Below are positions 10,311-60,236 of a DNA stretch of 64,000 bases, one piece after another; the stretch's first letter is position 1, and each line of letters begins with the position of its first letter. The notes under the pieces are model-generated. The model was not told the origin of the DNA and did no database searches. It saw nothing but the letters and a program-made list of their open reading frames with translations. The stretch lies in sequence record NC_009760.1; one strand, 5' to 3'. A program made the position numbers and the translations under genes.

Positions 10311-10315
10311 TGTAA

Positions 10316-42100: not shown

Positions 42101-42108
42101 TTAACAAG

Positions 42109-42137
42109 TAGCCCGGCTGAGATGCCGGGTTATTTTT
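42109..42137 (+). terminator. Intrinsic terminator after tube gene
   Basis: TAGCCCGGC-TGAGAT-GCCGGGTTA followed by TTTTT. Confidence 0.8.
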
Positions 42138-42151
42138 ATAGGAGGAATACT

Positions 42152-45383: not shown

Positions 45384-46040
45384 ATGTTACCACCAAAAGA
45401 ACAAATGCAAGCGATGAAAGCAGATCAATCTAGATTCGAAGCGCCGAACCCAAATGCAAAGATGCCGGGCTTCGGGCCTCCTGATATTGGCGGTGAACCA
45501 AAAGGATACAATCCGCAGGAAGTACAAGATGCATGGGCAAACATGGATGATGAAGAAGGATTGGAACAACCAATTCCTGATGATGCAGATATGGGACAAG
45601 AAACAGGTGAAGTATTCTTCACAGAGCCTCCTGCATGGGAAGGTGTTGGCGAATATCCTGAACCAGTAAGTCTAAAACAAAAGGGCAACTCCTTCTTACA
45701 AGAAGAATTGATTTGTCCGGGCGGGCCACCAGTTCATCAAGTAAACTCATGGAAGAAACAGTTTAGTGAAGATGGTCATGGTGTATTCTTATCTACCCTA
45801 TACGATGAAGTATTCATTTGGCGTACATTATCTCGTACAGAGTACCGTGAAATTATGGCACTGCCTAATACTGACCCTCTTCAACGTGAAGAAGTTATCT
45901 GCGAGATTTGCGTACTATTCCCGTACGATTACAACTTCACTGAGATGGCGAACCGTAAAGCTGGTATCCCTGCTCAAATCGCAGAAGATATTATGAAAGA
46001 ATCAGGATTCGAAAAAGCTGCTCCTCCAATCAGACTGTAG
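45384..46040 (+). CDS. Tail assembly chaperone, 218 aa
   Basis: Position between tube genes and tape-measure-like genes. IWRTLSRTEYREI...CVLFP...ESGF domain. Confidence 0.65.
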   Translation: MLPPKEQMQAMKADQSRFEAPNPNAKMPGFGPPDIGGEPKGYNPQEVQDAWANMDDEEGLEQPIPDDADMGQETGEVFFTEPPAWEGVGEYPEPVSLKQKGNSFLQEELICPGGPPVHQVNSWKKQFSEDGHGVFLSTLYDEVFIWRTLSRTEYREIMALPNTDPLQREEVICEICVLFPYDYNFTEMANRKAGIPAQIAEDIMKESGFEKAAPPIRL

Positions 46041-46049
46041 GTGATATAT

Positions 46050-46838
46050 ATGAATCCACAACAGATTGAAGCAATGATTCTTAGCTTCCGGAATGAGTAC
46101 AAGGAAGTATATCTCACTACAGTTGGTAACGAGGATTATATATGGAGAACATTAACACGAAAAGAACATCGTGAGATTGCGGAGTTTGCACCGGATGAAT
46201 ACAGTGCATTCGAACGTATCTGTCAGACATGCGTGCTATATCCGGTAATGGATTGGACAAGAACTCTTGCCTACTTACCGGAAGAACTTGCACCGCAGAT
46301 CATTGAGGAGTCAGGGTTTGGTAGCTTCCGTAAAGAGAAGCCCCTCCTTGACATCTTCCGAAAAGAATTAGAATCATTTGAGGCACAGGCGGAAATCATC
46401 GTCAATCGTGCCTTTCCTTATATCACATTCGAGATGATGGAGAACTGGACAAAAGAGAAGCTACTCAAGTATGTAGCGAAAGCAGAATGGCAACTCATCA
46501 ACATCGAAGGATATAAACATATGGCGCTTGTAACCGATGAGGAGATTCGTCAAATGAAGGAAGAAGAAGGAGAAGAGGTTGAGGAAACAGAAGAGGAAGA
46601 GGAGTTCGACATTATGGTCATTGCCAACGAGATGCGTAAAGCAGGGCAAGACCCAATGTTCGCATTACGCTCCCTGTACCAAAAACCAAAGACTCCTTAT
46701 GTAGAACGACCTATGATTGGTGGATTCCATCAAGTAGATACAATGATTGCAGGGACAACGGCTTGGAGAGGACGTGGCATGAACTATGGCAGATACGACG
46801 CAATACAGGAACAAGTACAGAGGGTATCTCGAAGATGA
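46050..46838 (+). CDS. Tail assembly chaperone paralog, 262 aa
   Basis: IWRTLTRKEHREI...CVLYP...ESGF matches the upstream gene. AGGTGA RBS fits ATG 46050. Confidence 0.65.
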   Translation: MNPQQIEAMILSFRNEYKEVYLTTVGNEDYIWRTLTRKEHREIAEFAPDEYSAFERICQTCVLYPVMDWTRTLAYLPEELAPQIIEESGFGSFRKEKPLLDIFRKELESFEAQAEIIVNRAFPYITFEMMENWTKEKLLKYVAKAEWQLINIEGYKHMALVTDEEIRQMKEEEGEEVEETEEEEEFDIMVIANEMRKAGQDPMFALRSLYQKPKTPYVERPMIGGFHQVDTMIAGTTAWRGRGMNYGRYDAIQEQVQRVSRR

Positions 46839-49800
46839 CGCTGACACATATCTAAGTCCCGAAATGGATCCTACAGCAAAAGTAATAATGGGAGGAATAG
46901 CCACTGTCGGTCTTGTTGCCGGTGGCTATTTAGCTTTCAAGAAGGGTGCGCTAAAGGATGTCATGCACTCTACGATTGCGAAGGCAGGTAGTTTCCGTAG
47001 AGGGAAAACAATTGCAATGAATGATGCGGTTCGGAAATGGTCACAAGATGACCGCATGGATGAACTAGGCAACGCCGTGATGAACTTAATGAAAGGCAAG
47101 CCGAAGGAAAGTAAGAAGAGTGCAAAAGAGTTTTTAGATGTCATGAGAGACTTTAAGCGTCACAAAGATGGTGCATTGCAAGAACATGCTGACCGTGTGG
47201 CTCGTATGAAGGAGTCTCAATTACGTGATAGAGAAATCGAAATCAAGACAGAGATGGCTTCTCATAAAGCGATGCAAGAACGCTTCCGTAAAGATAATAA
47301 TGATGAGAAAGCTGTACAGCGTGTATCGAAGTTATTTGACCAAACAATATTCGATAGACGTAACCTTGATAAGAAACTAGAGAAAGCTCGCGAACTGCAA
47401 ACAGGATTCCGTCATGCGACAATCAACGACCTGATTCGTTTAGGTGAGATCAACGAGGCAGAGGATTGGGTGCAAGAAGGGATTACTATCTCGACTCGTG
47501 AGTTTATGAAGAAAGCACAAGGCGAAGAGGCGATTAAGAAAGCTGGCGAGGATGGACGCAGACACTTCTTAAACAAAGTAGCTGACAACAGCATACTAAT
47601 TGATAAGAAGGATAAGATTGCTGACCTGCGTGACTTCCGTGATACATTCGAAGGTATGGTACATAGTTTAACAACAGACTTTACGATTCCACTTGTAAAG
47701 ATTAACCCGCTTCGTATGTTTTACATGGATCACTTCTTCACAGATAAATCAAAGCCATTGTTCCACGTTGCTACGTCTGATACAAAGAATCCAATTGTAA
47801 CGGGTCACAACGGTGCGCAAGGTAAACCGATTGTCTTTGCTGACGGAAAACTATTTGATGTGATGCACAAAGATGAAGCCGGTAATATGGTGACGAAACA
47901 AATCGACGGTGACTACTTCTTAGCAGACGCACAGAAGGGGCCTGTCGCACGATTACTTCGTAACATGTCCGGTATATCTATTTCAGAGTTCAGTAAGCCT
48001 GAGGCGAACGCTCCGTTCATCAAAAAGGCAAAGTATCATCTAGGTTCATTCTTTGATGTAGGTTTCCAAGATGAGCCGGGAGGACAATTAGATTTACTTG
48101 ACCCGACGAGTTGGGGTACATCCTTAATCAATACGGTAACAGGACGCTTCCGTCAAAGTGAATATGTAAAACGTATGGACTATTTATCAAATGCCTTCGG
48201 TAAAGATAAAGACTTCATCTACATGCGTAGACACATGGACTTAAAGGATGCGCCTAGCTATAAGGATTACCTGAATCAGTTCCGTGCAGGTCGAGACAAT
48301 ATGGATGAAGTAACAATGTCTACGATGTTTGGATATGGATTCTTCGAACGTCTAAACGCTACGCTGAACCAAGTGAACTTAGGTCTATCGAACAAAGCGC
48401 TCGGTTCTGCTTACGATGTATTCGAAGGACTGTTATTAAAACGTGTCGCTCCAATATGGGCTGGTATGGAACTATGGGATTACATGAACTATGAATCTGA
48501 GAATCTATTAGGGTTCCAATTCGAAGACCGATTCGCACAGATGTATGCAAACAGTTCTGTAGAGATTGCGAAGGTTCGTGATAACCTCGGCATTACAGAT
48601 TGGGCGAAAGGTGTTGCGCCGTTATTAGTAGGCGGTAGCGAACTTGCGGAGATTCCAATACTCGGTAACCTGCTAGACTGGAATGATACAGCAGAAGAAA
48701 CGCAGGACTACTGGGAGAATGGTGAAGTCGCTGTTCGTAAAGGTCGTTGGTGGCAATTAGGTAATACACCATACATCGGTGGTAAAACAGAATACTACCA
48801 ACCGAACTGGGTACGAAGAACATTAGCTGATGTGAAGTTCTCTGAATCACAGTATGGATCCCGTGAAGAATATTATGAGAATAGCTGGATGCCATCACTA
48901 CGTCATCCATTCGCACCAATCAAACACTTCTTTACTGACCAGTATCACTGGGAGGAGAAGCACTATCAAGACAGACCGTACATGATTACCGGTGGTATTC
49001 CTGAGATTGAAAACTTCCCGTTAATTGGGCCTATCTTAAATAGTACAATTGGTCAGCTATTAAAACCGCAACGTCAGATGCATATGGAAGCGTGGAACGG
49101 AGATGTACAAGGTATGCCGTTACCAGTCCCTCCTGAAACACTTGAGTATGCACAAGAGCGTACTGTGCCGATGACATTTGATAATGACGGGAATGCATCC
49201 TTCGGTTTCGCTTCAAATGAAGATAACGAGACAGATGAAGATGGCAATACGGAAATTGATCCGGGCGCAAGCGTACCTATCTTAACGCAGGGTGCTGCTT
49301 ATAATATGTTGCCTCCTGAAACGAAGGAACAAAACCAAGCCTTACAAGAGAAGCTATTCTCTTACATTACGGCTGGCGGTCAAGTGCAATTACTTCGTGG
49401 TGATCCAGGGGCAACAATATGGGATGCAACTTCTGTTATGGATACGAAGGCTCCAATGAGTACCGGTCTATTCAAACAGGAACGTCTGCCGATGAATAAG
49501 GATAAAGTAGAGACAGGTGCGCCACTAGAGACAGATGTACAACTACATCAAATGTTAGGGAACCTGCACTACAACATGACAGAGATGGGCGGATTCTACG
49601 GATTCATTACGACAAGTATCTTTGGTCAAGTCGGTAACAGCAATCCTATCCTGCAATCATCATCTGACCTGTCATCTTATACTCGTGCCTTTTGGGATAA
49701 TGACATCGGTGGTTTCGGAGGAGATGCCAATGAGATATTCCGTCGTTTCTTACCATCGGAAACATTTGAACATAAACAAAATGAAATCAACCCTGTAGCA

Positions 49801-52578
49801 AATACGATGCCGGACTGGTTACCGGGTAGCGATTACTTCGTTAACTTCCAAACAGGTGACCCCTACATCAAAGTGAAGAAGGGTGAATCACGTTTACCGG
49901 GCGAAGGGTATGAACGTTTATACAACATTGATTCTGAGAAGATGATGAAGCTAGATATTGGTGCATCCTTCATTGGATATGACGAACAACAGATTCGTGA
50001 CCATATGTTAAAGCGTGATGCCTATAAAGCAGAAGCCTTCAATAAGATTCTAAAAGCTGGTACGAAGATACATGAGCAAGTAGAGAAAGACTTACTGGCA
50101 AAAGGCGTAGCAGATGCGTCTGAGGAATATGTAAAGGATGAAGCAACAGGCATTGGCGGATTCTTCGACTTGTATGCAAACAATACAAAGCTACTCGACT
50201 GGGCGTTACAACAGAACGTAGCAGAGTTTAAATTCTATCAAACGCCACGAGAGGAAAGCGGAAGAGAACCGTCAGAAGCACTCGGCGGATTCTATGAAGA
50301 GGTCGATGTATTAAATGACATGGATAATACCCAGCGTCAAAGTTTCCTTGAACAATTCGTAGATGTGTATGGACAGGAAAGTGCGACAGTCGATATTAAG
50401 ACCCGTGGTGCAAAAGCATTCGCTAAAGAAGGGATGCACTTTGAGAACGTACAACAGCTTAACTTCTATGCAAAGCAAAAGGGTACACGCATGAACTACT
50501 TCATTGAGTTAAACCGTGACAACCCCGATGCAGGGATTAAGATATTTGCGTTCCAACAAAGTGATGACCTGCTGAACTATACGACGGAAAAAGTACAACG
50601 AGTGCGAGAAGGTATCCGTCAAGACATGGAATCCGGTAAGCTACATCGTGGTGACCTCTATGATCCAATCGACAGATTCAGAATACTAGCTGACGTTGCG
50701 CCGTACTCACAAGAGTATCGTGATATGAAAGGTCAGCTATCGAATATGAACTTAGATGAAGATGATATGAAGGAAGCGCAGGAGATTAAGAAGCAAGTAT
50801 CAGAACGAAAGCACAAGTATCGTTTCTATGACTACCGCTTCAAGACTGCGAATGTCGATGAAAAGATGGTTACAGTAGACCATGTAATCGACAGTAATAC
50901 ATTCGTATCTATGGAGTTTCCTGATAATCCAATCCGTCTGGCTGGGGTTCGTGTAAGTACCGCAAAGGATAACCCGATTGCAGACGAGGCGGCTCGTGTC
51001 ATTGGTCAAACCATCAAGGAAGGTTCGAAGATTCGTATACAGTATGATGCTGACGAGCAGAACCAAATCAAGGATGATACGTATAAGACGCTCCAAGCGG
51101 TTGTATACGACCACAAAGGACGTAACCTAAACAAATACCTTATCGACAATGAACTCGCAAAAGAGAAAGAGAATGACTACTCTGCGGCTGCGGTTCATGC
51201 ACGATTTACACCGGGTGAAATTAAGTTCGGTTCGATGTGGGAAAGCTTTGCTCATATGGATACTATCCTGCATACAAAGTTACTACAAGTTCGTTCTCCG
51301 CTTGAGTCTTATGAGCGCCGTGAAGTATACGGAAAAGACTGGCAAGAATGGACTGACCCAATTGAAGACTTCCTGATTCCTGCGATTCAGAGTTCTGCTA
51401 TTCATAATCCCGTTGTCGCAATCGGCGGTGGAGCAATTGCTGGTATGATGTTTGGTTCTCTAAAACCATCTGATATTGGCGGAGAGAAAGTTATTGGTCG
51501 TTACGGGAAGATCGTCGGCGGATTCATCGGTGCATCTGTTATGGGTATCGCTGTACTGAACCGTATGCTTACAGAAGCCATAACAGGAGAAGCATGGATT
51601 CCAGAACGTAGACAGAAAGAGCGTGACACAGAAGAATACTTCGATGTGTTAGAGTACATTAAGTACAACGCACTGTATGACCAGTATTCAAGAAAGGCAT
51701 TAAAGGAAGAAGGCATCAACGTTGAATCGTATTTAAGCAACGAGAAGTTCGAAGGAGATAAGCGTAAGCAAGATAAGACTGCCTTACAGGAAATCAAGAA
51801 AGAACTGTATCGTTCTCGTGCGAATCAAGTTGGGCCACTCATTGCGAAACTACGTGAGCAGTATGGCATCGAAGCAGAGACAAAAGAAGAAGCGATGAAA
51901 GCCATCAATAAAGAAATCACGAGTCTTACAACGCACAGGGAGATTAAAGAACTGTCTCCCATTGCAGCAAAAGCAATCATGTATAAACAGGCTGCGAAAC
52001 AAACGATGTATGGATACGAAGCAGGTGACCCAATTGCGAATATCTTATCGGCATTGCCGAAGAAAGACCGTGAGTACCTGACTCCATTTATCAAAGCGCC
52101 TGAGGAAGAAAGACAGAGAATCCTAGACATCGTGCCGAATTACATGAAACGTGTACTACAATCAGCATGGGGATTAGATGTAGATGAAAAGACACCACTG
52201 AAAGATTACTTTAAGAAACATGCACTGCCGGGTGCGAACTGGGAAGGTTGGAGAGAGAACGTATCTCTTGATGACATAAAGGTCAAGTTTGTTGACCGAG
52301 TGGGACTCGACCCGTCAGAATTTAATATATGGGAAAATGACAAACAACGTGCTGATAGGCTGAACGTACCAACGCCTGATGTGTTCAATGGACGAGAAAG
52401 TGCAGAAGAGTATTCTCGTAAGTTAAAAGAAATTTTAACAGGCTCTAATATTCATGGACTAAATATTGATATAATAGAGTCAGACAAACCGGGAACACAT
52501 ATAAATATGAACATTGCGCATGATCGACGTGACGATGTTCAGAAAATTATCAACCGTGATGGTCATTACATGTTATAA
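46786..52578 (+). CDS. Giant tape-measure-like virion protein (1930 aa) with PD-(D/E)XK nuclease and degenerate SNase domains
   Basis: Follows the chaperones. Helical, with Gly-rich hydrophobic segments. GTKIH, GFFD, VDIKT and QLNFY nuclease motifs, plus VIDSNT/IRLAG SNase-like motifs. Confidence 0.75.
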   Translation: MADTTQYRNKYRGYLEDDADTYLSPEMDPTAKVIMGGIATVGLVAGGYLAFKKGALKDVMHSTIAKAGSFRRGKTIAMNDAVRKWSQDDRMDELGNAVMNLMKGKPKESKKSAKEFLDVMRDFKRHKDGALQEHADRVARMKESQLRDREIEIKTEMASHKAMQERFRKDNNDEKAVQRVSKLFDQTIFDRRNLDKKLEKARELQTGFRHATINDLIRLGEINEAEDWVQEGITISTREFMKKAQGEEAIKKAGEDGRRHFLNKVADNSILIDKKDKIADLRDFRDTFEGMVHSLTTDFTIPLVKINPLRMFYMDHFFTDKSKPLFHVATSDTKNPIVTGHNGAQGKPIVFADGKLFDVMHKDEAGNMVTKQIDGDYFLADAQKGPVARLLRNMSGISISEFSKPEANAPFIKKAKYHLGSFFDVGFQDEPGGQLDLLDPTSWGTSLINTVTGRFRQSEYVKRMDYLSNAFGKDKDFIYMRRHMDLKDAPSYKDYLNQFRAGRDNMDEVTMSTMFGYGFFERLNATLNQVNLGLSNKALGSAYDVFEGLLLKRVAPIWAGMELWDYMNYESENLLGFQFEDRFAQMYANSSVEIAKVRDNLGITDWAKGVAPLLVGGSELAEIPILGNLLDWNDTAEETQDYWENGEVAVRKGRWWQLGNTPYIGGKTEYYQPNWVRRTLADVKFSESQYGSREEYYENSWMPSLRHPFAPIKHFFTDQYHWEEKHYQDRPYMITGGIPEIENFPLIGPILNSTIGQLLKPQRQMHMEAWNGDVQGMPLPVPPETLEYAQERTVPMTFDNDGNASFGFASNEDNETDEDGNTEIDPGASVPILTQGAAYNMLPPETKEQNQALQEKLFSYITAGGQVQLLRGDPGATIWDATSVMDTKAPMSTGLFKQERLPMNKDKVETGAPLETDVQLHQMLGNLHYNMTEMGGFYGFITTSIFGQVGNSNPILQSSSDLSSYTRAFWDNDIGGFGGDANEIFRRFLPSETFEHKQNEINPVANTMPDWLPGSDYFVNFQTGDPYIKVKKGESRLPGEGYERLYNIDSEKMMKLDIGASFIGYDEQQIRDHMLKRDAYKAEAFNKILKAGTKIHEQVEKDLLAKGVADASEEYVKDEATGIGGFFDLYANNTKLLDWALQQNVAEFKFYQTPREESGREPSEALGGFYEEVDVLNDMDNTQRQSFLEQFVDVYGQESATVDIKTRGAKAFAKEGMHFENVQQLNFYAKQKGTRMNYFIELNRDNPDAGIKIFAFQQSDDLLNYTTEKVQRVREGIRQDMESGKLHRGDLYDPIDRFRILADVAPYSQEYRDMKGQLSNMNLDEDDMKEAQEIKKQVSERKHKYRFYDYRFKTANVDEKMVTVDHVIDSNTFVSMEFPDNPIRLAGVRVSTAKDNPIADEAARVIGQTIKEGSKIRIQYDADEQNQIKDDTYKTLQAVVYDHKGRNLNKYLIDNELAKEKENDYSAAAVHARFTPGEIKFGSMWESFAHMDTILHTKLLQVRSPLESYERREVYGKDWQEWTDPIEDFLIPAIQSSAIHNPVVAIGGGAIAGMMFGSLKPSDIGGEKVIGRYGKIVGGFIGASVMGIAVLNRMLTEAITGEAWIPERRQKERDTEEYFDVLEYIKYNALYDQYSRKALKEEGINVESYLSNEKFEGDKRKQDKTALQEIKKELYRSRANQVGPLIAKLREQYGIEAETKEEAMKAINKEITSLTTHREIKELSPIAAKAIMYKQAAKQTMYGYEAGDPIANILSALPKKDREYLTPFIKAPEEERQRILDIVPNYMKRVLQSAWGLDVDEKTPLKDYFKKHALPGANWEGWRENVSLDDIKVKFVDRVGLDPSEFNIWENDKQRADRLNVPTPDVFNGRESAEEYSRKLKEILTGSNIHGLNIDIIESDKPGTHINMNIAHDRRDDVQKIINRDGHYML

Positions 52579-52604
52579 GGAGTTCGGTTGCGGACTCCTT
52601 TTTT
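52577..52604 (+). terminator. Intrinsic terminator between the two giant genes
   Basis: AAGGAGTTCG-GTTG-CGGACTCCTT followed by TTTT. Confidence 0.7.
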
Positions 52605-52622
52605 ATACAGAAAGGGGTTGCG

Positions 52623-55600
52623 ATGATGAATAACTATAACGAAAACTATGCACGAGAAATATTCTTCAACCGCATGATGTACTTTATCAATGAGATAAAG
52701 ACTGGCATGGTGAAAGATGGTGTTCAGAATCCTGCGGCTGAACAACAACTATTAACACAGGCGCACAATGTGATACAAGCGCAGACGATGGCGGATACAA
52801 ACTACAAGTTCCAACTGAATAACATCTATGCATTAACACGAAACTCTGACCCGGTTACATTAGGGAATACAATGGCAAACAATATCAAGGACTTAGGTTA
52901 CTTACCTGATTCGATGAAACGTGTTGCCGAACGACAAGCGGTATCCTTTACGGAGGAACTAAACTCATTTATGTCAGGGTTACAATCGAGAGGTTTAACG
53001 AATACGTCAACATCCGTTGTAAAAGCAAATAGTATGTTAACGAATACCGAAACATTTATCCGTCATGATCTGTATCAAAGCGTGGAGGACATCGGTATCA
53101 TTGGTCGTCGTATTCATGACCAAAACTTCTATCACGATAATGTATTCGCACAAGTTAACGAGGCAATCTTCCAGTATACACAGGGAGCTGATGCAGTTGA
53201 CCAGCAAGGACGTAAAGTTGGATTCTCCGACTTAGAAAGAAGCTATCGTGATTATCTCATGACACAATCTATTACAGCGCAAGAGATGGATAGATGGGGC
53301 GTAATCGGGTATACCGACGACAAGATTAATAAGGTACTTGCCAACATTGACCATGACCCTGCTTCCTTCCGTATCTTCGCTCATGATTTACAACAAGGTG
53401 TGAATCAATACACTCGTTTAATCAAAGGCGACAGACAACAGCTAAACGGCGTGCGACAAATCTTAAAGGATGCAGAAGCGCAAAAGAAACCTTTAGTTGA
53501 AGTTATTGAGAAGTCGTATGCGAATACGAAGATCGGGCAAGAGGTATTAAAGAAAGTACGAGCAAGTGGGAATAAGACAGATGATTACGTTCGTAACATG
53601 ATGCGTAACTTCATGATGATGAAAGGCAATATGGAAGTACCGGTGGTTCTTGCATCTAGTGTCACTGACCAAACGCAACGTATGGTAGATGCTATCGGCG
53701 GAGCAATGAAAGAGATGAACAATCCGAAGAATCCTGACTATGCCTTGTATCAAAAGTACCGTGGCATCAAAGGTGAGCATACGAAGTTTATGAACGAACT
53801 GTACACGATTCGTAAAGAGGCGAACGTAGAAGGTAGCTTATACATAAACAATCAAGAGAGTTTATCTCACCGTGCAAACAGTATGAATATGAATGAAGAT
53901 ACGAACGTTGCTTACAAGAAGGAAACTCTCCCTGATGTAAACGGTGAAGACCGTCCACGATTAAATGGAGAGAAACGTTCAACACTACCATCGCAAAGCA
54001 ATGAGTATGTATCGAGAACATATGATACGAAAATGGGTTCTGTTATTCATATTGATGAAGCAAACAATACGTACTATGAATCCAATCGTCTTGCTATGAT
54101 CTTGGATGCAAATGACGAAGCGGAACGTAAACATAAACGAGCAATCGAGGAACAATTGGCAGAAGGTCGTGAACGTCCACAACAACCAATGAATAGATTC
54201 CGTAATATCTTCGCCCAGTATTTTGTAGAGACAGGAAGCGAAGAAGCAAAACGATTAGCTGGCAAAGCAGAAGCAGACCTATCGGTGGTATTCAATAAGG
54301 ATAAGTATGACCCGTCTATGCGTAACGTTATATCGGAAGCTACCTTCAATGATATTAAGGAACGTATTGCTAACAAAGAAGTATCATACGAAAACTTTAG
54401 CATCACTCGTTATCAAGCGAAAGACCGTAACCAACGTAGCGTTGATAAGTGGGAATCGGCACTAGAGAATAACGAGTCCATTCGTATGAAGGGTAGCGAG
54501 GTTGGTCACCGCATCGTTCCGAATAAAGATGGTCGTGCCGTAAGTTCAGATGGCTACGTTACATTAGAACGTGAACATGAACTGGTAGAGAATGCACGTA
54601 TCAAGATGAAGGTTGAACAGGAGAATGTACAAGACCTACTCGACCAAATGGATGAACGACGTAGACGAGCGAAGGTTACAGAAGAAGCGTCTCGTAAAGT
54701 TGTAGAAGAAATCCAAGACGACGCATTCATTAACATTCGATACAAGCAAGAGGCTGTAAGCGAAGACCTGAAAAACCGTAGTGAGTTCTTGTACGAACGA
54801 CTATCGAATACAGATAAATACTTACAAGATAATGACCTAACGAAGTACGGCATTAAAGAAGCGAACGTTCGAGCAATTGATATTGCGAATGAGTTCAATG
54901 TATATCGTAAGAATTTAACGGAATTGGATCCGGAAGGTATCGAGCATCGTAAGTCATTACCGAAGTTCTTATTACGTATGGCAGAATCTCATGCGCCGTG
55001 GATGATGGATGATACATCTGAACTGGTGAGTCATTCTGAGGTTGCACTTCGTGAAGTATTAAACCGTATGGCGAATGGTCAACAGACTATCGACTTAACG
55101 GACGAAGGTTTACTAAAAGAGTTCGATGTATATGCAGAACGTGATGCAATGGGGCAACTCACACAGCGTGCTGAAAAGCAACGTAACCAGTTCATTGAAA
55201 ACCTAGCAGGTCGTAATATCTCGCAACGACTAGAAGATAATTTATTCTTAAAAGTGCTTGGCGAGATGGTACAACAGAACTTCCAAGACAAGGGTACAAA
55301 TGGCGGAGTTGAAAGTTTAATCCGTGCGGCTGCTGATATGGCAGAGCAAAATGACCGCCGTGGGATTGCGCATGATATTCATTCCATGATTAAGTCTCCA
55401 ACAATGGAGTTCTTATTTAAAGAACACGGATACTATGCACAGGCAAGATCATTAACACCTGACCAAATTGGACGTATCATTCGTGAACGAGAAATGACAG
55501 AAGCATCAATGGTATCGTTCGAACGACTAATACAGAATGATGTGGACTTTAGCACGGCTGATGAGATATGGTCACAGCGTGGTATCAACCCAATGGAGGG

Positions 55601-58600
55601 TCAAGAAGTTCGTGTAGGCGGAGATGCTTACATCAAGCAAGCCTATGACGAAGTATATGATACTCGAATAGCGAATGCTTACGGTAATCCTGAACAAAGC
55701 GTTGTAACAAAACTAGGTAGCTTAACAGATACAGACTACAAAGGTGGTCGTGTCACAGATGAAGCTGAGATTATGGAACGCTCGAAGGCACAGCTATTAC
55801 GAGTAAAAGAAGAAGAGTTAACGATGGAGTACAAGGCAAACAAAATGAATACCTTCATCGAAGACCTGAAAACAAAAGGTGTATCCTTCAATCATATTGA
55901 TGATGTTAACACGATGCTTGATTTAGCGAAGGAACAAGGTATGGAACATATCGAGGCTACGGTTCGTGACCAACCTGCTTACATCTACAAAGGTGAGAAG
56001 GGCGATGTTATCGCTCACTTACTTCGTGATGATCGTCGTATTCAGTTAGTAAACTCCTCTGCTGGATTACAAGACAGCGTGCATGTGGACGATAAGTATC
56101 CAACAAAGTTATACGGCGGAGCGCAGATTCAATATGACTACGGTGATGGTGGTGTACCAGTTCGTCACCAATACACTTCTTACGATACGATTCAAGGTAG
56201 TGGTAAGTTTGCTCGTAGTTCCAATCCATCTGTTACGGTAGAAGGCTTCCAGCGATTCCTACGAGGTACAGATAAGATGACGTACCTTGATATAGAAACA
56301 ACAGGTTTATCGGGTTCTACTTTACCGGAAGAAGTTATTCAGCCTCTTGAGGTTCATATGCAGAAGGTTCAGTGGGATAGAAGAAACGGACGTTTATTAC
56401 AGAACGAGGATGGAGAGTTCGTGATTCGTCACGCTGGTCGTGAGACTGTTCGTGAGCAACAGCTTATCATGGGTCTGAAACCTGAGACAAAAGCATTCAT
56501 GGAAGATGTTATTGCGAACGAGGACTTCCGATTCACCGTTGGTGATAGAAGCTATGACCTGATTGATTACGAACATCACAAGGGTCGTATTAATGACTTA
56601 ATCAACAAGTCCGAAAATGCGGTAGACATTCGCAGACAAATCGTAGAGAAGCAAGATAAGTTATGGTTCCTACGTAACATTGCGAAGTATGCATTCCCTG
56701 ATACAGAAGATCATGGAGAGATTATGCGATACCAACAGTATGCAGGTAACATGGAACTTCCGAAGAGTGGTTCTGAGTTCCTGACTGTATTGCGAGAAGA
56801 TGTACAAAAGGCTGCTGATAACTTAGCGAGCGCAGGTACATCCGGTGGTGTGAAGTTCTCACCAGTGCAGGTTGGTACGACAGAAGAAGGTATGATTAAA
56901 CACGTATCTCGATTCGTCGGAAAAGGAATGCTTGCAGGTCAGAACGTAGCAGATGCCGATTGGAGTAAGTTCGTTAACATCTCAAATAAGTTAGTGCAGG
57001 AGGCGACGTTACCATTTAAGACAGCGCAGAAAGCGTTGATGGATGGTATCACAGATGTAGCCAACACACATGTACTGGATACACTTCGTGACATTCAATT
57101 AGCCGCGAACTTATCTGATGTAAATGGATTCGACAAAGCAACGAAAGCCTATATCGAACCAGTCATCAAACAGATGATGAAAGAAGATACAGGTTACAAG
57201 TCACTGAGCGACGTATTTGACGATATACGTAAAGCTAATAGCGAAGGTATGGGACATGAACGATTCACTGCTATGCTAGATTCTCTGCAAGCTGGCAAAG
57301 ATGTAGACGGATTCGATAGCAAGTTAACGATGAACCTACATCGTAGAATCGAAGACTTCGCTCACATTGATGATTTATATCAAAGTGCAAGTGAAGGAAA
57401 CTCTATGCCGAAGTGGGCGAAGAAGGGTAAACTTAACCACTTCAATGATGAGTCCACAAAAGAAATGCTAACAGGTATTGATAAGCTAGTTAAAGATGTG
57501 AATGTAACTGGTGACGAATTGCGACGTGTACAGAAGATACAAGCAGACTTACCACGACCTAAGATTGTAGAGCAAATGTACTTATACAATATGGTCAATC
57601 CAAATGCGGTAGGACGTAGTGCAGAAGCACAGTTCGAAGCAATGAATATAAAAGTAGATGATGCAACAGGTCTTCACTTGGCTCGTGCCGATGTTCGAAA
57701 CAACTTAAAGTTAATTGAACGATACGGACAAGAGTTAGGTTATGACCCTGACTTCATGTTCTTTGATACAACGCCACTACAAAAAGGTGATGTCGTTGAC
57801 CTACATACATCATTCGATGACCGTATTGCACGAGGCGTATACTCGGTAGACAGTATTGATAAAGCAAAGCATACAATGACATTCGGACGTACACTAGAAG
57901 ATGGTACAGAAGAGATGCATACGATATACGGGAAATCAAGTGCTGACCTTTCTCGTAAAGTAAACAACCACTTCGCTTTCATTGGTACAGGTGGTGACGC
58001 AGGTGCGACAGAGTTAGCTATTGACCGATTCACACAAGATAATGCAAGACGACAAGTGAATCGTGCGATGCGACATGCTGATGTATTTGATAAGTACAAC
58101 AATGAGATTGATGAACTGGTTGAGAATAACAAACTGACGCACGACCCTCTTCGTAAGATGCAAGCTATTTATGAAGAAGCACAGGATAAAGTAAATCCTG
58201 AATATGGCCCAGCGATGCATCCAAAAGATTTATCACTAGCAGAGCAAGTCGCCCTGCATAAAGATAACGTCAACTTCTTTGAAGGTACGGCGGTGCAAGA
58301 AGCATTAGATGAAACAGCATCGAATACAAAGCGTCTTGCCTTTGATAAGACGGAAGACTGGATGTTATCACCTGAGGGTAGACAGCGTTATACTTTCTTA
58401 GATGAGGTTCGCTCAATGGAAGCAGCCGGAGCATTGGATCCGAAGATGAGTAATACACTTGTGAAACAATGGAACGATGCGATTAAAGAAGAGGGATTAA
58501 GACGAGGAGCAAAACACTCTGTCTTCAACCGTGCGAATCTTGGTACACTCGATAACCGATTCGGATATATGAATGGTCGTCAGTTTGTATTAGATACATC

Positions 58601-60236
58601 TGATCCATCTCGTATCTCGAACGGATTATGGAGAATGGCAGAAGGGTTAAAAGGATTAACAAACGAACCGGATGAAGTAAAGGCAAAAGCGAAGGCTCTT
58701 AATTCCCTTGTACTTCCGTTCTTACAGGAACAAGGATTCATTAAAGAGTTTGACCAAGCGTCACCTCCGGGAATGGTCAGCGTTGTAAATCAGCTTATGA
58801 AGAATAAACATAACCTTCCGGCTTATGAAGACTATGACCCAATCGTAAGTGCTGAAATGAGTAAGAGTGATATGGGATACCAAAAGTTCTTACAAGATAA
58901 GCATGATGAAATCCTTGAACCACACCGTCAATCGTTAACGACTCTGCAACGTAGTAAGCAACAAGTGTATCAAAGTCAGTTATCGGAGTTACGTGAACAA
59001 GGACTCTATGATCCACGGCTGACAGTTGAGCCACGCATTAGTGGATTCGATTTAGATACAATGCGCTTTGGTCGTAACGGCAGTGTATCAACTATGCAAG
59101 CAGATGAACTAGGACGATTGCTACAAGTGATTGACCCAAGAACAAGTGCTGATGCAGTTGACGCACGTAATACCATTGCTGGTGAATTATTTAACCGTGC
59201 GATTGGTGATGGACGTTTCAATATCCAAGACGTTATCGACGCTGGTGAGAGCGACAGACTTGCAGCAATGCGTGCCTTAAACTGGGTGACACCTGATAAC
59301 CAAGTGAACACGAACGTTGCCACTCACTTAGTCGGTGAGCCGGGCATTCATGCAAGTGAACCTCTTGGTATGCAAAGTGTTCAGATGTTAGATAAGATTG
59401 CTGAACAAGATGTCGGAAAGTATACTAGAGATAACGGATATAGTTCTTACCAAGATAAGATTCGTAACTGGAAAGGATACGAAGATACGGATGGTAAATG
59501 GGTAGGTGCGTATGATACAAGCGGTAACCGTCTTGAATATCCGGGTCGATTCCCTGAGGCTCCCGACAATGAATCACGAAGAGTATCCACCTTCGATCCG
59601 AAGGAAGCATCTCGTGCTTCGAATGAACAGATTAAAGCTGATGGACAAGGACGACGCACGCAAACACCAACGCCGGGTGAGGGCGGTCAGAATGCTCTAC
59701 GTTACTACCGTACAGAGAACCTTGACCCGAATACCAATTACCAACACAGCAATGCGATTAGTGAAGCCCTGCATTCTGCAAAAGAGAAAGCTACTAATCT
59801 AGCATCTGAAATGTGGCACGGCACACCGGGTAAAGCAATGAAGTGGATGGCCGGTATCGGTGCTGCTGCTTTTGCGGTGAACCAGTTTATGAATGCCGCT
59901 TCTCCTGTTCAGTTGCAACGTAAACCTATGGGTCACGGCGTTGAAGGTGCAACAGGTCAAGCGAACGACGGATTAAATCAACAGCAGAACCAACCTGCTA
60001 CTGGCGGTAAAACATACGTCAATAGCGGAGAGAGTCAACCACCTGCTGGTTATGAAGTGAATGTAAAAGGTACGGCTAAAGGAGATGTCGATTACAATGC
60101 GATGCAGGAGAAGGTTAATCAGACCATCGGTAACTTCAACGCTAACATCTCGGATGACCGTTCTACATTCAACCGTTCATGGCTAGAGAAACAGTTCGGT
60201 GACTACATTGATAGAGGATACGTGGGGCAGGAATAA
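52623..60236 (+). CDS. Tape measure protein candidate (2537 aa) with insertion-split DEDDh exonuclease domain
   Basis: Longest ORF, helical, directly before the hub gene. YLDIETTGL, AGQNVADAD, VLDTL and HLARAD motifs. Confidence 0.75.
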   Translation: MMNNYNENYAREIFFNRMMYFINEIKTGMVKDGVQNPAAEQQLLTQAHNVIQAQTMADTNYKFQLNNIYALTRNSDPVTLGNTMANNIKDLGYLPDSMKRVAERQAVSFTEELNSFMSGLQSRGLTNTSTSVVKANSMLTNTETFIRHDLYQSVEDIGIIGRRIHDQNFYHDNVFAQVNEAIFQYTQGADAVDQQGRKVGFSDLERSYRDYLMTQSITAQEMDRWGVIGYTDDKINKVLANIDHDPASFRIFAHDLQQGVNQYTRLIKGDRQQLNGVRQILKDAEAQKKPLVEVIEKSYANTKIGQEVLKKVRASGNKTDDYVRNMMRNFMMMKGNMEVPVVLASSVTDQTQRMVDAIGGAMKEMNNPKNPDYALYQKYRGIKGEHTKFMNELYTIRKEANVEGSLYINNQESLSHRANSMNMNEDTNVAYKKETLPDVNGEDRPRLNGEKRSTLPSQSNEYVSRTYDTKMGSVIHIDEANNTYYESNRLAMILDANDEAERKHKRAIEEQLAEGRERPQQPMNRFRNIFAQYFVETGSEEAKRLAGKAEADLSVVFNKDKYDPSMRNVISEATFNDIKERIANKEVSYENFSITRYQAKDRNQRSVDKWESALENNESIRMKGSEVGHRIVPNKDGRAVSSDGYVTLEREHELVENARIKMKVEQENVQDLLDQMDERRRRAKVTEEASRKVVEEIQDDAFINIRYKQEAVSEDLKNRSEFLYERLSNTDKYLQDNDLTKYGIKEANVRAIDIANEFNVYRKNLTELDPEGIEHRKSLPKFLLRMAESHAPWMMDDTSELVSHSEVALREVLNRMANGQQTIDLTDEGLLKEFDVYAERDAMGQLTQRAEKQRNQFIENLAGRNISQRLEDNLFLKVLGEMVQQNFQDKGTNGGVESLIRAAADMAEQNDRRGIAHDIHSMIKSPTMEFLFKEHGYYAQARSLTPDQIGRIIREREMTEASMVSFERLIQNDVDFSTADEIWSQRGINPMEGQEVRVGGDAYIKQAYDEVYDTRIANAYGNPEQSVVTKLGSLTDTDYKGGRVTDEAEIMERSKAQLLRVKEEELTMEYKANKMNTFIEDLKTKGVSFNHIDDVNTMLDLAKEQGMEHIEATVRDQPAYIYKGEKGDVIAHLLRDDRRIQLVNSSAGLQDSVHVDDKYPTKLYGGAQIQYDYGDGGVPVRHQYTSYDTIQGSGKFARSSNPSVTVEGFQRFLRGTDKMTYLDIETTGLSGSTLPEEVIQPLEVHMQKVQWDRRNGRLLQNEDGEFVIRHAGRETVREQQLIMGLKPETKAFMEDVIANEDFRFTVGDRSYDLIDYEHHKGRINDLINKSENAVDIRRQIVEKQDKLWFLRNIAKYAFPDTEDHGEIMRYQQYAGNMELPKSGSEFLTVLREDVQKAADNLASAGTSGGVKFSPVQVGTTEEGMIKHVSRFVGKGMLAGQNVADADWSKFVNISNKLVQEATLPFKTAQKALMDGITDVANTHVLDTLRDIQLAANLSDVNGFDKATKAYIEPVIKQMMKEDTGYKSLSDVFDDIRKANSEGMGHERFTAMLDSLQAGKDVDGFDSKLTMNLHRRIEDFAHIDDLYQSASEGNSMPKWAKKGKLNHFNDESTKEMLTGIDKLVKDVNVTGDELRRVQKIQADLPRPKIVEQMYLYNMVNPNAVGRSAEAQFEAMNIKVDDATGLHLARADVRNNLKLIERYGQELGYDPDFMFFDTTPLQKGDVVDLHTSFDDRIARGVYSVDSIDKAKHTMTFGRTLEDGTEEMHTIYGKSSADLSRKVNNHFAFIGTGGDAGATELAIDRFTQDNARRQVNRAMRHADVFDKYNNEIDELVENNKLTHDPLRKMQAIYEEAQDKVNPEYGPAMHPKDLSLAEQVALHKDNVNFFEGTAVQEALDETASNTKRLAFDKTEDWMLSPEGRQRYTFLDEVRSMEAAGALDPKMSNTLVKQWNDAIKEEGLRRGAKHSVFNRANLGTLDNRFGYMNGRQFVLDTSDPSRISNGLWRMAEGLKGLTNEPDEVKAKAKALNSLVLPFLQEQGFIKEFDQASPPGMVSVVNQLMKNKHNLPAYEDYDPIVSAEMSKSDMGYQKFLQDKHDEILEPHRQSLTTLQRSKQQVYQSQLSELREQGLYDPRLTVEPRISGFDLDTMRFGRNGSVSTMQADELGRLLQVIDPRTSADAVDARNTIAGELFNRAIGDGRFNIQDVIDAGESDRLAAMRALNWVTPDNQVNTNVATHLVGEPGIHASEPLGMQSVQMLDKIAEQDVGKYTRDNGYSSYQDKIRNWKGYEDTDGKWVGAYDTSGNRLEYPGRFPEAPDNESRRVSTFDPKEASRASNEQIKADGQGRRTQTPTPGEGGQNALRYYRTENLDPNTNYQHSNAISEALHSAKEKATNLASEMWHGTPGKAMKWMAGIGAAAFAVNQFMNAASPVQLQRKPMGHGVEGATGQANDGLNQQQNQPATGGKTYVNSGESQPPAGYEVNVKGTAKGDVDYNAMQEKVNQTIGNFNANISDDRSTFNRSWLEKQFGDYIDRGYVGQE

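What the first reader, a model, noticed from the sequence alone, without database searches (positions are those of the whole stretch)
49950..50560. PD-(D/E)XK (Cas4/RecB-like) nuclease domain in the 1930-aa virion giant
Seen: GASFIG (G1059), GTKIHEQVE (H1096), E1113, GIGGFFD (D1128), VDIKT (D1203, K1205) and QLNFY (Q1224, Y1228). This is the full ordered motif set of Cas4/RecB-family nucleases, with a ~70-aa insertion between the two acidic motifs and no Fe-S cysteines. Inference: an apparently active nuclease built into a tail-lumen protein and probably injected. Together with the DEDDh domain of the next gene, this suggests an injected nuclease payload.
Basis: partly seen in the sequence, partly recalled or inferred. 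Interest (0 to 1): 0.75.

Follow-up and report, generated by a model that had tools for sequence, protein, structure and literature searches.

The report
Nuclease domain inside giant tail protein
A 1930-residue structural protein of Bacillus phage 0305phi8-36 has a well-preserved DNA-cutting domain of the RecB/Cas4/lambda-exonuclease type inserted in its middle, so this phage probably carries a ready-made DNA-end nuclease in its tail, which has not been described for proteins of this kind.

Summary
The window is bases 1-64000 of Bacillus thuringiensis phage 0305phi8-36. The ORF is gp145, annotated only as "virion structural protein", found in virions by mass spectrometry.

**Identity (confidence about 0.95).** It is a real PD-(D/E)XK domain.
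- H1096, E1113, D1128, D1203, K1205, Q1224 and Y1228 are 97-100% conserved in 120 relatives, down to 31% identity.
- A domain profile hits Cas4 SSO0001 (E=2.7e-4).
- An AlphaFold model (pLDDT 91.5) matches Cas4, MGME1 and lambda exonuclease in Foldseek (probability 1.0).
- It is not Cas4 proper: gp145 has no cysteine, so no Fe-S cluster.

**New findings.**
- The domain (about 1052-1288) is an insertion into a conserved hinge of a core ~2000-residue protein. That protein's gene sits in the tape-measure slot of a wide jumbo-phage lineage.
- 51 of 70 relatives lack the insert, and 5 of 19 that have it carry decayed catalytic residues.
- A catalytically dead SNase-like domain follows it.

**Not shown.** Tail-lumen location, ejection and substrate are inferred. 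I favour action on DNA ends at the entry site.

**Neighbour gene.** The DEDDh claim for gp146 rests on motifs only.

**Verdict.** A new variant of a known kind; moderately interesting.

The parts
46786..52578 (+). ORF145 / gp145, 1930 aa, giant virion protein in the slot after the tail chaperones
   Evidence: 100% identical to NC_009760 at the same coordinates; GenBank note 'identified as virion protein by mass spectrometry'
46882..46938 (+). N-terminal hydrophobic Gly-rich segment (residues 33-51)
   Evidence: Kyte-Doolittle 19-residue window peak 1.86
49846..49926 (+). N-side flank of the insertion site (residues 1021-1047), conserved far beyond the nuclease-bearing clade
   Evidence: G1024, D1025, G1033, E1034, R1036, L1037, P1038, G1039 are 97-100% conserved; the flank is also present in relatives without the nuclease
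49939..50649 (+). PD-(D/E)XK nuclease domain (residues about 1052-1288), RecB/Cas4/lambda-exonuclease clade, no Fe-S cluster
   Evidence: Bounds come: relatives without the domain align up to about residue 1050 and resume at about 1290
50071..50073 (+). H1096, motif I histidine in the long helix
   Evidence: (120/120)
50122..50124 (+). E1113 on the first core strand
   Evidence: (120/120)
50167..50169 (+). D1128, motif II aspartate on the second core strand
   Evidence: 120/120; aligned with the Cas4 SSO0001 motif II Asp
50188..50370 (+). Lineage-specific alpha/beta insert (residues about 1135-1195) between motifs II and III
   Evidence: absent in 81 of 120 relatives; modelled as a folded subdomain, pLDDT above 95
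50392..50400 (+). D1203-I-K1205, motif III (D/E)xK on the third core strand
   Evidence: (D 116 / E 4; K 120/120)
50455..50469 (+). Q1224...Y1228, the QxxxY motif in the following helix
   Evidence: (Q 119/120, N1226 120/120, Y 120/120)
50650..50721 (+). C-side flank of the insertion site (residues 1289-1312)
   Evidence: Y1292, D1296, L1301, D1303, A1305, P1306 and S1308 are 100% conserved. In 51 of 70 relatives this flank follows the N-side flank directly (62-65 aa total span in most of these 51)
50851..51168 (+). SNase-like (thermonuclease/OB-fold) domain, residues about 1356-1461, without the canonical catalytic residues
51397..51567 (+). Two hydrophobic Gly-zipper-like segments (residues 1538-1559 and 1573-1594)
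   Evidence: glycines nearly invariant across the family; a relative matches Pfam Gly-zipper models weakly
45384..46838 (+). ORF143 and ORF144, the two-gene tail assembly chaperone directly upstream
   Evidence: Hardies et al. 2007 (PMC2147016)
52623..60236 (+). ORF146 / gp146, 2537 aa, second giant virion protein, annotated 'hypothetical tape measure protein'
   Evidence: The DEDDh-like residue set D1223, E1225, D1446, H1685, D1690 is invariant in 5 relatives but has no profile support

Best explanation
SHOWN.
- Residues about 1052-1288 of gp145 are a genuine PD-(D/E)XK nuclease domain of the RecB/Cas4/lambda-exonuclease clade. It has no Fe-S cluster and a complete, conserved catalytic set: H1096, E1113, D1128, D1203, K1205, Q1224, Y1228.
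- It is a domain insertion into a short conserved hinge of a core protein of about 2000 residues.
- The gene for that protein lies directly after the tail assembly chaperones, in the canonical tape-measure slot, in a wide lineage of large myoviruses.
- Most members of the lineage lack the insert.

INFERRED.
- gp145 lies inside the tail and leaves it at infection, as tape-measure and ejection proteins do.
- It anchors at the cell membrane through its three hydrophobic Gly-rich segments.
- The nuclease then works on DNA ends at the entry site.
- Because the domain is tethered mid-chain in a 212-kDa membrane-active protein, the DNA it most plausibly meets is the first-entering end of the phage's own linear genome, which carries 6.5-kb terminal repeats.
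- 5' resection there would leave a long 3' tail. Such an end is a poor substrate for AddAB/RecBCD-type enzymes and can anneal within the repeats.

My confidence in the identity and the intact active site is about 0.95. It is about 0.55 that the domain is delivered and active at infection, and about 0.3 that the target is the phage's own DNA ends.
For: Identity:
- PHROGs phrog_1706 'CRISPR/Cas system associated', E=2.7e-7.
- Domain-only profile A2 against the PDB: Cas4 SSO0001 (4ic1), E=2.7e-4, aligning motif II D, motif III xK and QxxxY.
- Pfam PDDEXK_1 in 5 of 18 relatives (best E=2.7e-4), Cas_Cas4 in 3, YqaJ in 1.
- AlphaFold2 model: pLDDT 91.5, pTM 0.87, with the canonical helix / three strands / helix / strand order carrying the motifs.
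- Foldseek against the PDB: 10 hits at E<=1e-3, all Cas4, MGME1 or SSO0001. LHK-Exo (TM 0.64) and lambda exonuclease (TM 0.57) follow just above that cut-off, then AdnAB, RecE and Exo5.
- Foldseek against BFVD: an independent model of gp145 itself (TM 0.93), then 78 stand-alone phage PD-(D/E)XK, Cas4-like or YqaJ exonucleases.

Selection:
- Catalytic columns are 97-100% conserved in 120 relatives, while the domain overall is 31-57% identical in most of them.
- The residues do decay in some distant lineages, so their retention here reflects constraint.

Insertion:
- In most of the 51 of 70 distinct relatives without the domain, the two flanks lie 62-65 aa apart in total; 19 of 70 have the domain.

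Tail-internal, membrane-active giant:
- Gene order is tube, chaperones, giant 1, giant 2, hub.
- gp145 was found in virions by mass spectrometry.
- Three hydrophobic Gly-rich segments, with glycines conserved across the family.
- No Cys in either giant.

End-directed chemistry:
- From my own knowledge of these enzymes, every close structural relative is a DNA-end-dependent exonuclease.
- The genome is linear and non-permuted, with a 6.479-kb terminal repeat (PMC3357382).
Against: - There are no direct data on where gp145 sits in the virion, whether it is ejected, or on which side of the membrane the nuclease ends up.
- The domain is dispensable in the lineage: it is absent in 51 of 70 relatives and its active site has decayed in 5 of 19. 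That fits an accessory role better than an essential one.
- gp145 itself gives no Pfam, NCBIfam or PADLOC hit for this region. Identity to solved nucleases is only 10-13%.
- The 61-residue insert next to the active site could occlude it.
- An active nuclease stored next to packaged DNA would need restraint.
- If gp146 really carries a 3'-5' DEDDh exonuclease, nucleases of both polarities would suit destruction of foreign DNA better than careful processing of the phage's own ends.
Confidence: 0.55

Rival explanations
1. Injected offensive payload. The nuclease is delivered into the cell and degrades non-phage DNA such as host DNA, plasmids, a competing phage genome or defence-related DNA. It might act together with a 3'-5' exonuclease in gp146.
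For: - The active site is intact and conserved.
- The patchy gain, loss and decay pattern is typical of conflict genes.
- DEDDh-like invariant residues occur in gp146 and 4 relatives.
- In many relatives the second giant is an RNA-polymerase-like enzyme that would have to act in the cytoplasm. This suggests the two-giant module is delivered cargo.
Against: - All close folds are DNA-end-dependent exonucleases, which are poorly suited to an intact circular chromosome.
- The domain is tethered mid-chain in a protein with three hydrophobic segments, so its reach is limited.
- The DEDDh assignment has no statistical support.
- gp146 and its close relatives lack the polymerase-like region.
Confidence: 0.25
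2. Virion-internal role. The domain acts during assembly or in the finished particle, not in the cell. For example, it might hold or trim the DNA end that descends into the tail after head-tail joining.
For: - Virion-associated nucleases of the restriction-endonuclease fold with packaging roles are known: the T4 gp4-type head completion protein, discussed in PMC7824862.
- End-threading enzymes grip DNA termini (relatives).
- The adjacent SNase-like OB domain lacks catalytic residues and could simply bind nucleic acid.
Against: - A pure holder would not need every catalytic residue to stay invariant.
- 51 of 70 relatives with the same tail architecture manage without the domain.
Confidence: 0.12
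3. Inactive relic. The domain is a structural or binding module that no longer cuts, like the Cas4-derived nucleocapsid protein TP1 of the archaeal virus TTV1.
For: - There is a precedent for a Cas4 domain exapted as a virion protein (PMC4625639).
- Five distant relatives have clearly decayed active sites.
- The neighbouring SNase-like domain is dead by canonical criteria.
Against: - In gp145 and all 120 closest relatives the full catalytic set is retained at 97-100%.
- Decay is seen where constraint was lost, so retention here argues for activity.
- The model shows the canonical arrangement at pLDDT above 95.
Confidence: 0.08

Closest known systems
Cas4 nucleases (SSO0001, PDB 4ic1; type I-C Cas4, PDB 8d3l)
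   Same: Same fold and the same ordered motifs: His/Glu, Asp, (D/E)xK, QxxxY. Profile hit E=2.7e-4; best Foldseek hits E=1.2e-4 to 4.5e-4, probability 1.0; PHROGs Cas4-like family E=2.7e-7.
   Different: No cysteine at all, so no Fe-S cluster. Not next to CRISPR genes. Nested inside a 1930-residue virion protein. Has an extra 61-residue insert. Sequence identity is about 10-12%.
Phage recombination exonucleases: lambda Exo, LHK-Exo, RecE, YqaJ-type
   Same: Best TM-scores (0.57-0.64). No Fe-S cluster. Of phage origin. 78 stand-alone viral relatives by fold.
   Different: From my own knowledge, those are stand-alone proteins of about 200-350 residues, made after infection, usually ring-forming and paired with an annealing protein. 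Here the domain is one module of a structural giant with no partner gene beside it.
Human MGME1 (PDB 5zyv, 8xa9)
   Same: Fe-S-free, DNA-end-dependent PD-(D/E)XK exonuclease. Foldseek E=2.8e-4 to 6e-4.
   Different: A eukaryotic mitochondrial enzyme with no virion context.
RecB / AddB / AdnAB nuclease domains
   Same: A PD-(D/E)XK module of this clade embedded in a very large multidomain protein. From my own knowledge of RecB, the His...Asp...Asp-x-Lys pattern matches its metal site. AdnAB appears.
   Different: Those are coupled to helicase motors. gp145 shows no helicase or ATPase domain.
Tape-measure and ejection proteins with embedded enzymes (mycobacteriophage TM4 tape measure, T5 Pb2, T7 gp16; my own knowledge)
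   Same: An enzymatic module built into a long tail-internal or ejected protein with hydrophobic segments, encoded after the tail chaperones.
   Different: The known embedded enzymes are cell-wall hydrolases. My two literature searches found no nuclease reported in such a protein.
TTV1 nucleocapsid protein TP1, derived from Cas4 (PMC4625639)
   Same: A Cas4-type domain recruited into a virion protein.
   Different: According to that paper's abstract, TP1 is a derived structural nucleocapsid protein of an archaeal virus. gp145 keeps the full catalytic set.

Membership tests
PD-(D/E)XK (restriction-endonuclease-like) superfamily | Core alpha/beta fold: helix, three strands, helix, strand | tested here: met
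   AlphaFold2 model, pLDDT 91.5, with that element order. The significant Foldseek PDB hits (E below about 0.07) are members of this fold, probability up to 1.0.
PD-(D/E)XK (restriction-endonuclease-like) superfamily | Acidic residue on strand 2 plus (D/E)xK on strand 3 | tested here: met
   D1128 in 120/120; D1203 in 116/120 with E in 4; K1205 in 120/120. They lie on strands 103-112 and 179-187 of the model.
RecB/Cas4/lambda-Exo clade (Pfam PDDEXK_1 and relatives) | Motif I His/Glu in the first helix and a QxxxY motif after motif III | tested here: met
   H1096 100%, E1113 100%, Q1224 99%, Y1228 100%. QxxxY aligns with that of SSO0001.
RecB/Cas4/lambda-Exo clade (Pfam PDDEXK_1 and relatives) | Score above the Pfam gathering threshold | tested here: not met
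   gp145 has no Pfam hit. The best relative scores 19.5 bits against a cutoff of 22. 5 of 18 relatives match at E<=1, best 2.7e-4. Membership therefore rests on profile-to-PDB and fold evidence.
Cas4 proper (DUF83, PF01930) | Four cysteines binding an Fe-S cluster | tested here: not met
   0 Cys in 1930 residues.
Cas4 proper (DUF83, PF01930) | Association with CRISPR-cas genes | tested here: not met
   The gene lies in the tail module of a lytic phage.
Staphylococcal nuclease (SNase, PF00565), for the adjacent domain 1356-1461 | Sequence match to the family | tested here: inconclusive
   Relative P0060 scores 28 bits against a cutoff of 21. The family profile hits thermonuclease at E=0.001. 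gp145 itself matches NucI at E=0.0011, far below the cutoff.
Staphylococcal nuclease (SNase, PF00565), for the adjacent domain 1356-1461 | Catalytic and Ca-binding residues D21, R35, D40, E43, R87 | tested here: not met
   The equivalents in gp145 are N1371, A1386, S1391, K1394, T1435 (mapping). None of 120 relatives has the Asp-x-Pro-Glu motif.
Tape-measure protein | Gene directly downstream of the tail assembly chaperones | tested here: met
   gp143/gp144, then gp145. The order is the same in the related loci that have enough upstream sequence.
Tape-measure protein | Protein length proportional to tail length; located in the tube lumen | not testable with these tools
   The original authors assigned the tape-measure role to gp146 from its length (PMC2147016). 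No structural data are available.
Ejected (pilot/cargo) virion proteins | Present in the virion | tested here: met
   This comes from the GenBank annotation, not from a test of mine: 'identified as virion protein by mass spectrometry'.
Ejected (pilot/cargo) virion proteins | Leaves the particle and enters the cell envelope or cytoplasm at infection | not testable with these tools
   Only indirect evidence: hydrophobic Gly-rich segments and no Cys.
DEDDh 3'-5' exonuclease, for gp146 as the finding claims | ExoI (DxE), ExoII (D) and ExoIII (HxAxxD) motifs in one fold | tested here: inconclusive
   D1223, E1225, T1226, T1227, G1228, N1441, D1446, H1685, A1687 and D1690 are invariant in 5 sequences of 24-53% identity. 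ExoI to ExoIII spans 462 residues. No hit in Pfam, PHROGs or the PDB, by single sequence or by profile.

The most novel reading that the evidence does not exclude
A widespread lineage of large myoviruses carries a tandem pair of giant proteins in its tail as a pre-packaged early-infection toolkit. In the 0305phi8-36 clade the first giant delivers a membrane-tethered RecB-type nuclease. This nuclease resects or caps the entering genome end, or destroys rival linear DNA, before any phage gene is expressed. In many other clades the second giant is an RNA-polymerase-like enzyme. This would be the first nuclease cargo built into a protein in the tape-measure slot.
Probability: 0.3. Interest if true: 0.8.

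Novelty: new variant of a known kind. Interest (0 to 1): 0.6.

Why it matters
What large phages bring into the cell besides DNA is largely unknown outside a few models such as N4, phiKZ, crAss-like phages and P1.

- **A new class of tail-borne enzyme.** gp145 has stood since 2007 as "virion structural protein". A conserved, apparently competent DNA-end nuclease nested in a protein in the tape-measure slot would add nucleases to the enzymes a tail can deliver. So far these are cell-wall hydrolases.
- **A concrete hypothesis.** It suggests how a 219-kb linear genome with long terminal repeats could survive or prepare its ends during slow entry.
- **A natural comparison set.** The family has members with the domain present, with it decayed and without it. 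This allows the role to be studied by comparison alone.
- **Better annotation.** The result improves the annotation of about 260 metagenomic giants and several isolated Bacillus, Moorella and Acinetobacter phages.

Tried and rejected
- **Family and single-sequence searches on gp145.** Pfam on the whole protein and on the fragment found nothing relevant. PADLOC and NCBIfam found nothing for the nuclease. Single-sequence phmmer against the PDB found nothing relevant.
- **Close-relative scan.** A scan of viral contigs with the single fragment found only the phage itself.
- **Structure prediction.** I did not send those sequences elsewhere. I used an alignment of the window fragment plus database proteins instead (A3). 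An earlier job was too large.
- **Second AlphaFold model.** The conserved region 580-1020 gave pLDDT 63 and pTM 0.44. That is too poor to search with, so the scaffold's own function stays unknown.
- **Stand-alone relatives.** Among 1.84 billion representatives there were only 31 hits, all giants or pieces of split giants. The two short hits I checked were pieces of split genes.
- **gp146 as a virion RNA polymerase.** I rejected this for this phage. The DxDGD region found in many second giants is absent from gp146 and its close relatives. The YonO-like polymerase that Iyer et al. list is another gene.
- **Intron test.** Rfam found nothing at the shared interruption site of the first giant in three relatives.
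- **Literature.** The 2007 Virology proteomics paper is not held, so I have no copy number or peptide coverage for gp145.
- **Genome-wide check not done.** I did not test whether 0305phi8-36 lacks a stand-alone exonuclease of this type, because of the limit on family searches.


Full report
**Source and gene.** The window is identical, at the same coordinates, to bases 1-64000 of Bacillus thuringiensis phage 0305phi8-36 (NC_009760 / EF583821). The finding lies in ORF145 (46786..52578, +, 1930 aa). GenBank annotates it as [quoted passage not shown].

Upstream are the tail sheath, the tube and the two-gene tail chaperone gp143/gp144. Downstream are gp146 (2537 aa, "hypothetical tape measure protein") and the baseplate hub gp147. 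The comparative paper on this phage gives gp145 no function. [quoted passage not shown]

**Check of the observation.** All quoted motifs are at the stated residues, and the protein has no cysteine.

A database search with residues 1021-1320 found 261 relatives. Almost all are proteins of 1800-2100 residues, many of them on contigs of about 200 kb. I aligned the domain regions of the best 120, which are 31-99% identical to gp145 there. Conservation by column:

| Residue | Share in 120 relatives |
|---|---|
| G1059, S1061, G1064, G1092 | 100% each |
| H1096 | 100% |
| E1113 | 100% |
| G1125 | 99% |
| D1128 | 100% |
| D1203 | 97% (the other 4 have E) |
| K1205 | 100% |
| Q1224 | 99% |
| N1226 | 100% |
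| Y1228 | 100% |

The stretch about 1135-1195 is missing in 81 of the 120. In most relatives, therefore, the two acidic motifs have the normal short spacing.

**What the domain is: sequence evidence.** Single-sequence searches are weak.
- There is no Pfam hit, and nothing in the PDB by phmmer.
- There is a PHROGs hit to the Cas4-like family phrog_1706, E=2.7e-7.

Profiles are clearer.
- A domain-only alignment of 18 diverse relatives (A2) hits Cas4 SSO0001 (4ic1) at E=2.7e-4. The alignment pairs the motif II Asp, the motif III Lys and QxxxY.
- Scanned singly, 5 of the 18 match Pfam PDDEXK_1 (best E=2.7e-4), 3 match Cas_Cas4 and 1 matches YqaJ. One search agrees.

**What the domain is: fold evidence.** An AlphaFold2 model of residues 1021-1320 is confident (pLDDT 91.5, pTM 0.87; alignment A3, 39 sequences). 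Its element order is as follows:
- a long helix carrying H1096
- a strand carrying E1113
- a strand carrying D1128
- the extra insert as a small alpha/beta subdomain
- a strand carrying D1203 and K1205
- a helix carrying Q1224 and Y1228
- two more strands and a long helix

Foldseek against the PDB gives 10 hits at E<=1e-3, all from one clade: type I-C Cas4, human MGME1 and SSO0001. Just above that cut-off come LHK-Exo (TM 0.64, rmsd 4.7) and lambda exonuclease (TM 0.57). AdnAB, RecE, Exo5 and Argonaute-associated Cas4 follow at weaker E-values.

Against predicted viral structures, the top hit is an independent model of gp145 itself (TM 0.93). Then come 78 stand-alone phage PD-(D/E)XK, Cas4-like or YqaJ exonucleases.

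The domain is therefore a true member of the RecB/Cas4/lambda-exonuclease branch of the PD-(D/E)XK superfamily. It is not Cas4 in the strict sense, because it has no Fe-S cysteines and no CRISPR context. From my own knowledge of RecB, its H...D...DxK pattern corresponds to the metal site of the RecB nuclease domain.

**The domain is an insertion into a conserved giant.** Scanning viral contigs with the family alignment gave 80 loci. In the great majority, a chaperone-sized gene is followed by a giant of about 2000 residues and then a second giant of about 2300-2700 residues.

Counts among the 70 distinct first giants:

| State | Number |
|---|---|
| Nuclease insert present | 19 |
| Insert absent | 51 |

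In most of the 51 without the insert, the two flanking stretches (gp145 residues 1021-1047 and 1289-1312) lie next to each other, with a total span of 62-65 residues.

Pairwise HMM alignments show that these proteins match gp145 up to about residue 1050 and resume at about 1290. That sets the domain bounds at about 1052-1288 (nt 49939-50649).

Of the 19 with an insert, 14 keep the full H-E-D-(D/E)-K-Q-Y set and 5 have lost several of these residues (L014, L018, L020, L023, L059).

Distribution in other collections:
- **GenBank phages.** Only 0305phi8-36 has the nuclease. The scaffold also occurs in Bacillus phages vB_BceM_WH1, KLEB27-3 and Edson, in Moorella phage MTATph1 and in Acinetobacter phage ME3, always as "structural" or "hypothetical" protein.
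- **Bacterial genomes.** The full version occurs on a 206.5-kb "plasmid" of Paenibacillus sp. EC2-1 and on a few contigs from metagenome-assembled genomes.
- **Protein representatives.** A search of 1.84 billion representatives with the core domain found only 31 hits, all giants or pieces of them, and no stand-alone close relative.

**Other parts of gp145.** Residues about 1356-1461 resemble staphylococcal nuclease.
- The family profile hits thermonuclease at E=0.001.
- One relative passes the Pfam SNase threshold.
- gp145 matches NCBIfam NucI at E=0.0011.
- The positions equivalent to SNase D21, R35, D40, E43 and R87 are N1371, A1386, S1391, K1394 and T1435.
- None of 120 relatives has the Asp-x-Pro-Glu motif.

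This is a dead SNase-like OB fold, at most a binding module. It too is optional in the wider family.

gp145 has three hydrophobic Gly-rich segments at 33-51, 1538-1559 and 1573-1594. Their glycines are nearly invariant across the family.

Neither gp145 nor gp146 contains a cysteine, although most other virion proteins in the window have some.

The most conserved region, about 600-1020, has no known family. It could not be modelled well.

**How it most likely works.** What is shown: the identity, the conserved active site, the insertion architecture, and presence in virions (from the GenBank annotation). What is inferred is that gp145 lies inside the tail and leaves it at infection. That inference rests on the gene's place in the canonical tape-measure slot, the hydrophobic segments, and analogy with tape-measure and ejection proteins.

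All close structural relatives act on DNA ends. The domain is also tethered in the middle of a large, probably membrane-inserting protein. I therefore think its most likely substrate is a DNA end at the entry site.

The genome is linear and non-permuted, with a 6.479-kb terminal repeat (PMC3357382). Pre-packaged 5' resection of the entering end would give a long 3' tail. From my own knowledge of RecBCD-type enzymes, such an end is a poor loading site for them. It is also ready to anneal within the repeats.

The gain, loss and decay pattern favours it. The end-dependence of the fold clade and the tethering count against it. A virion-internal role and an inactive relic are less likely, for the reasons given with the rival explanations.

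**The neighbour gene.** Simple searches give nothing for gp146. It has only a few detectable relatives.

In an alignment of five of them (24-53% identity), these residues are invariant: D1223, E1225, T1226, T1227, G1228, N1441, D1446, H1685, A1687 and D1690. That pattern looks like ExoI/ExoII/ExoIII of DEDDh exonucleases, but it is spread over 462 residues. A profile search of the PDB finds no exonuclease. I cannot tell whether the claim holds.

**A side result.** In 30 of 53 distinct second giants from the wider lineage there is an invariant Asp-x-Asp-Gly-Asp motif, preceded by an Arg-x-Pro motif. A profile of that region hits the phiKZ non-virion RNA polymerase subunit gp55 (E=4.4e-6), followed by more than 50 further RNA polymerase largest-subunit sequences among the 60 best matches shown. 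The alignment falls on their catalytic Asp triad. Pfam RNA_pol_Rpb1_2 matches 6 of 27.

gp146 and its close relatives lack this region. There are thus two kinds of second giant.

**Comparison and novelty.** The fold and chemistry are known. So is the idea of enzymes built into tail-internal proteins, but from my own knowledge the known cases are cell-wall hydrolases. My literature searches found no nuclease described in a tape-measure-slot protein. The nearest precedents they turned up are the Cas4-derived but structural nucleocapsid protein of TTV1 (PMC4625639) and the small T4 gp4-type head completion nuclease (PMC7824862). I rate the finding as a new variant of a known kind.

**Self-check.** Alignments and HMMs stayed in the scratch folder. 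I once entered a PubMed Central id from memory in the same turn in which a tool showed it. That paper was not held.

Noticed in passing
window 50851-51168 (gp145 residues about 1356-1461): An SNase-like OB-fold domain follows the PD-(D/E)XK domain. The canonical catalytic and Ca-binding positions are replaced (N1371, A1386, S1391, K1394, T1435). Other acidic and Asn residues (D1421, D1423, E1424, D1431, N1447, N1449, E1460, D1464) are highly conserved.
   Followed up: partly
loci L006, L008, L010, L011, L013, L014, L016, L034, L045, L053 and others (second giant ORF, about 75-85% along it): In 30 of 53 distinct second giants of the wider lineage, an invariant Asp-x-Asp-Gly-Asp region matches the catalytic site of RNA polymerase largest subunits (phiKZ gp55 E=4.4e-6; Pfam RNA_pol_Rpb1_2 in 6 of 27). 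gp146 and its close relatives lack it.
   Followed up: partly
window 56289-57692 (gp146 residues 1223-1690): DEDDh-like residue set (D1223, E1225, D1446, H1685, D1690), invariant in gp146 and 4 relatives but spread over 462 residues and without any profile support.
   Followed up: partly
window 46786-60236: Neither giant (gp145 of 1930 aa, gp146 of 2537 aa) contains a single cysteine. Most other virion proteins in the window have 1-6.
   Followed up: no
relatives P0021, P0027, P0028, P0032, P0035, P0043, P0073, P0078, P0091, P0110: Inteins (Pfam LAGLIDADG_3 / Intein_splicing) interrupt the first giant at four sites. In gp145 numbering these are about 660 (seven proteins), about 1015, about 1030 (inside the N-side flank of the nuclease insertion site) and about 1490.
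   Followed up: partly
L083 6541-13694 (Bacillus phage KLEB27-3); L150 594-6185; L151 1684-9877: The first giant is split at the same spot, just before the N-side flank, by an ORF of about 204-214 aa with no known family. Two of the upstream pieces end in a similar short read-through tail. Rfam finds no intron in the two loci searched (L083, L151). L151 also has a free-standing LAGLIDADG ORF further on.
   Followed up: partly
L099, L104, L111, L116, L120/L126, L121/L125, L132/L136 and others (Acidobacteriaceae MAG chromosomes): Short ORFs (180-460 aa) contain only the two flank motifs joined together. They often occur as identical copies in inverted orientation about 10-18 kb apart on chromosomal contigs of up to 3.2 Mb.
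   Followed up: no
L085 (NZ_CP186007.1, Paenibacillus sp. EC2-1 'plasmid pla', 206,502 bp): A record deposited as a plasmid carries the same tail module, with a nuclease-bearing first giant (53% identity) and a gp146-type second giant. It is probably a 0305phi8-36-like phage genome kept as an episome or carried in the culture.
   Followed up: no
L059 about 10001-10660: A different insert of about 200 residues, with no Pfam match and a poor fit to the nuclease, sits at the same insertion site. The hinge may be a hotspot for domain insertion.
   Followed up: partly
window 41318-43660 and 60268 onward: The RefSeq record has inconsistent product names. gp140 and gp141 are called 'major head protein' while their notes say tail tube. 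gp147 is 'endolysin' in RefSeq but 'baseplate hub protein' in GenBank.
   Followed up: no
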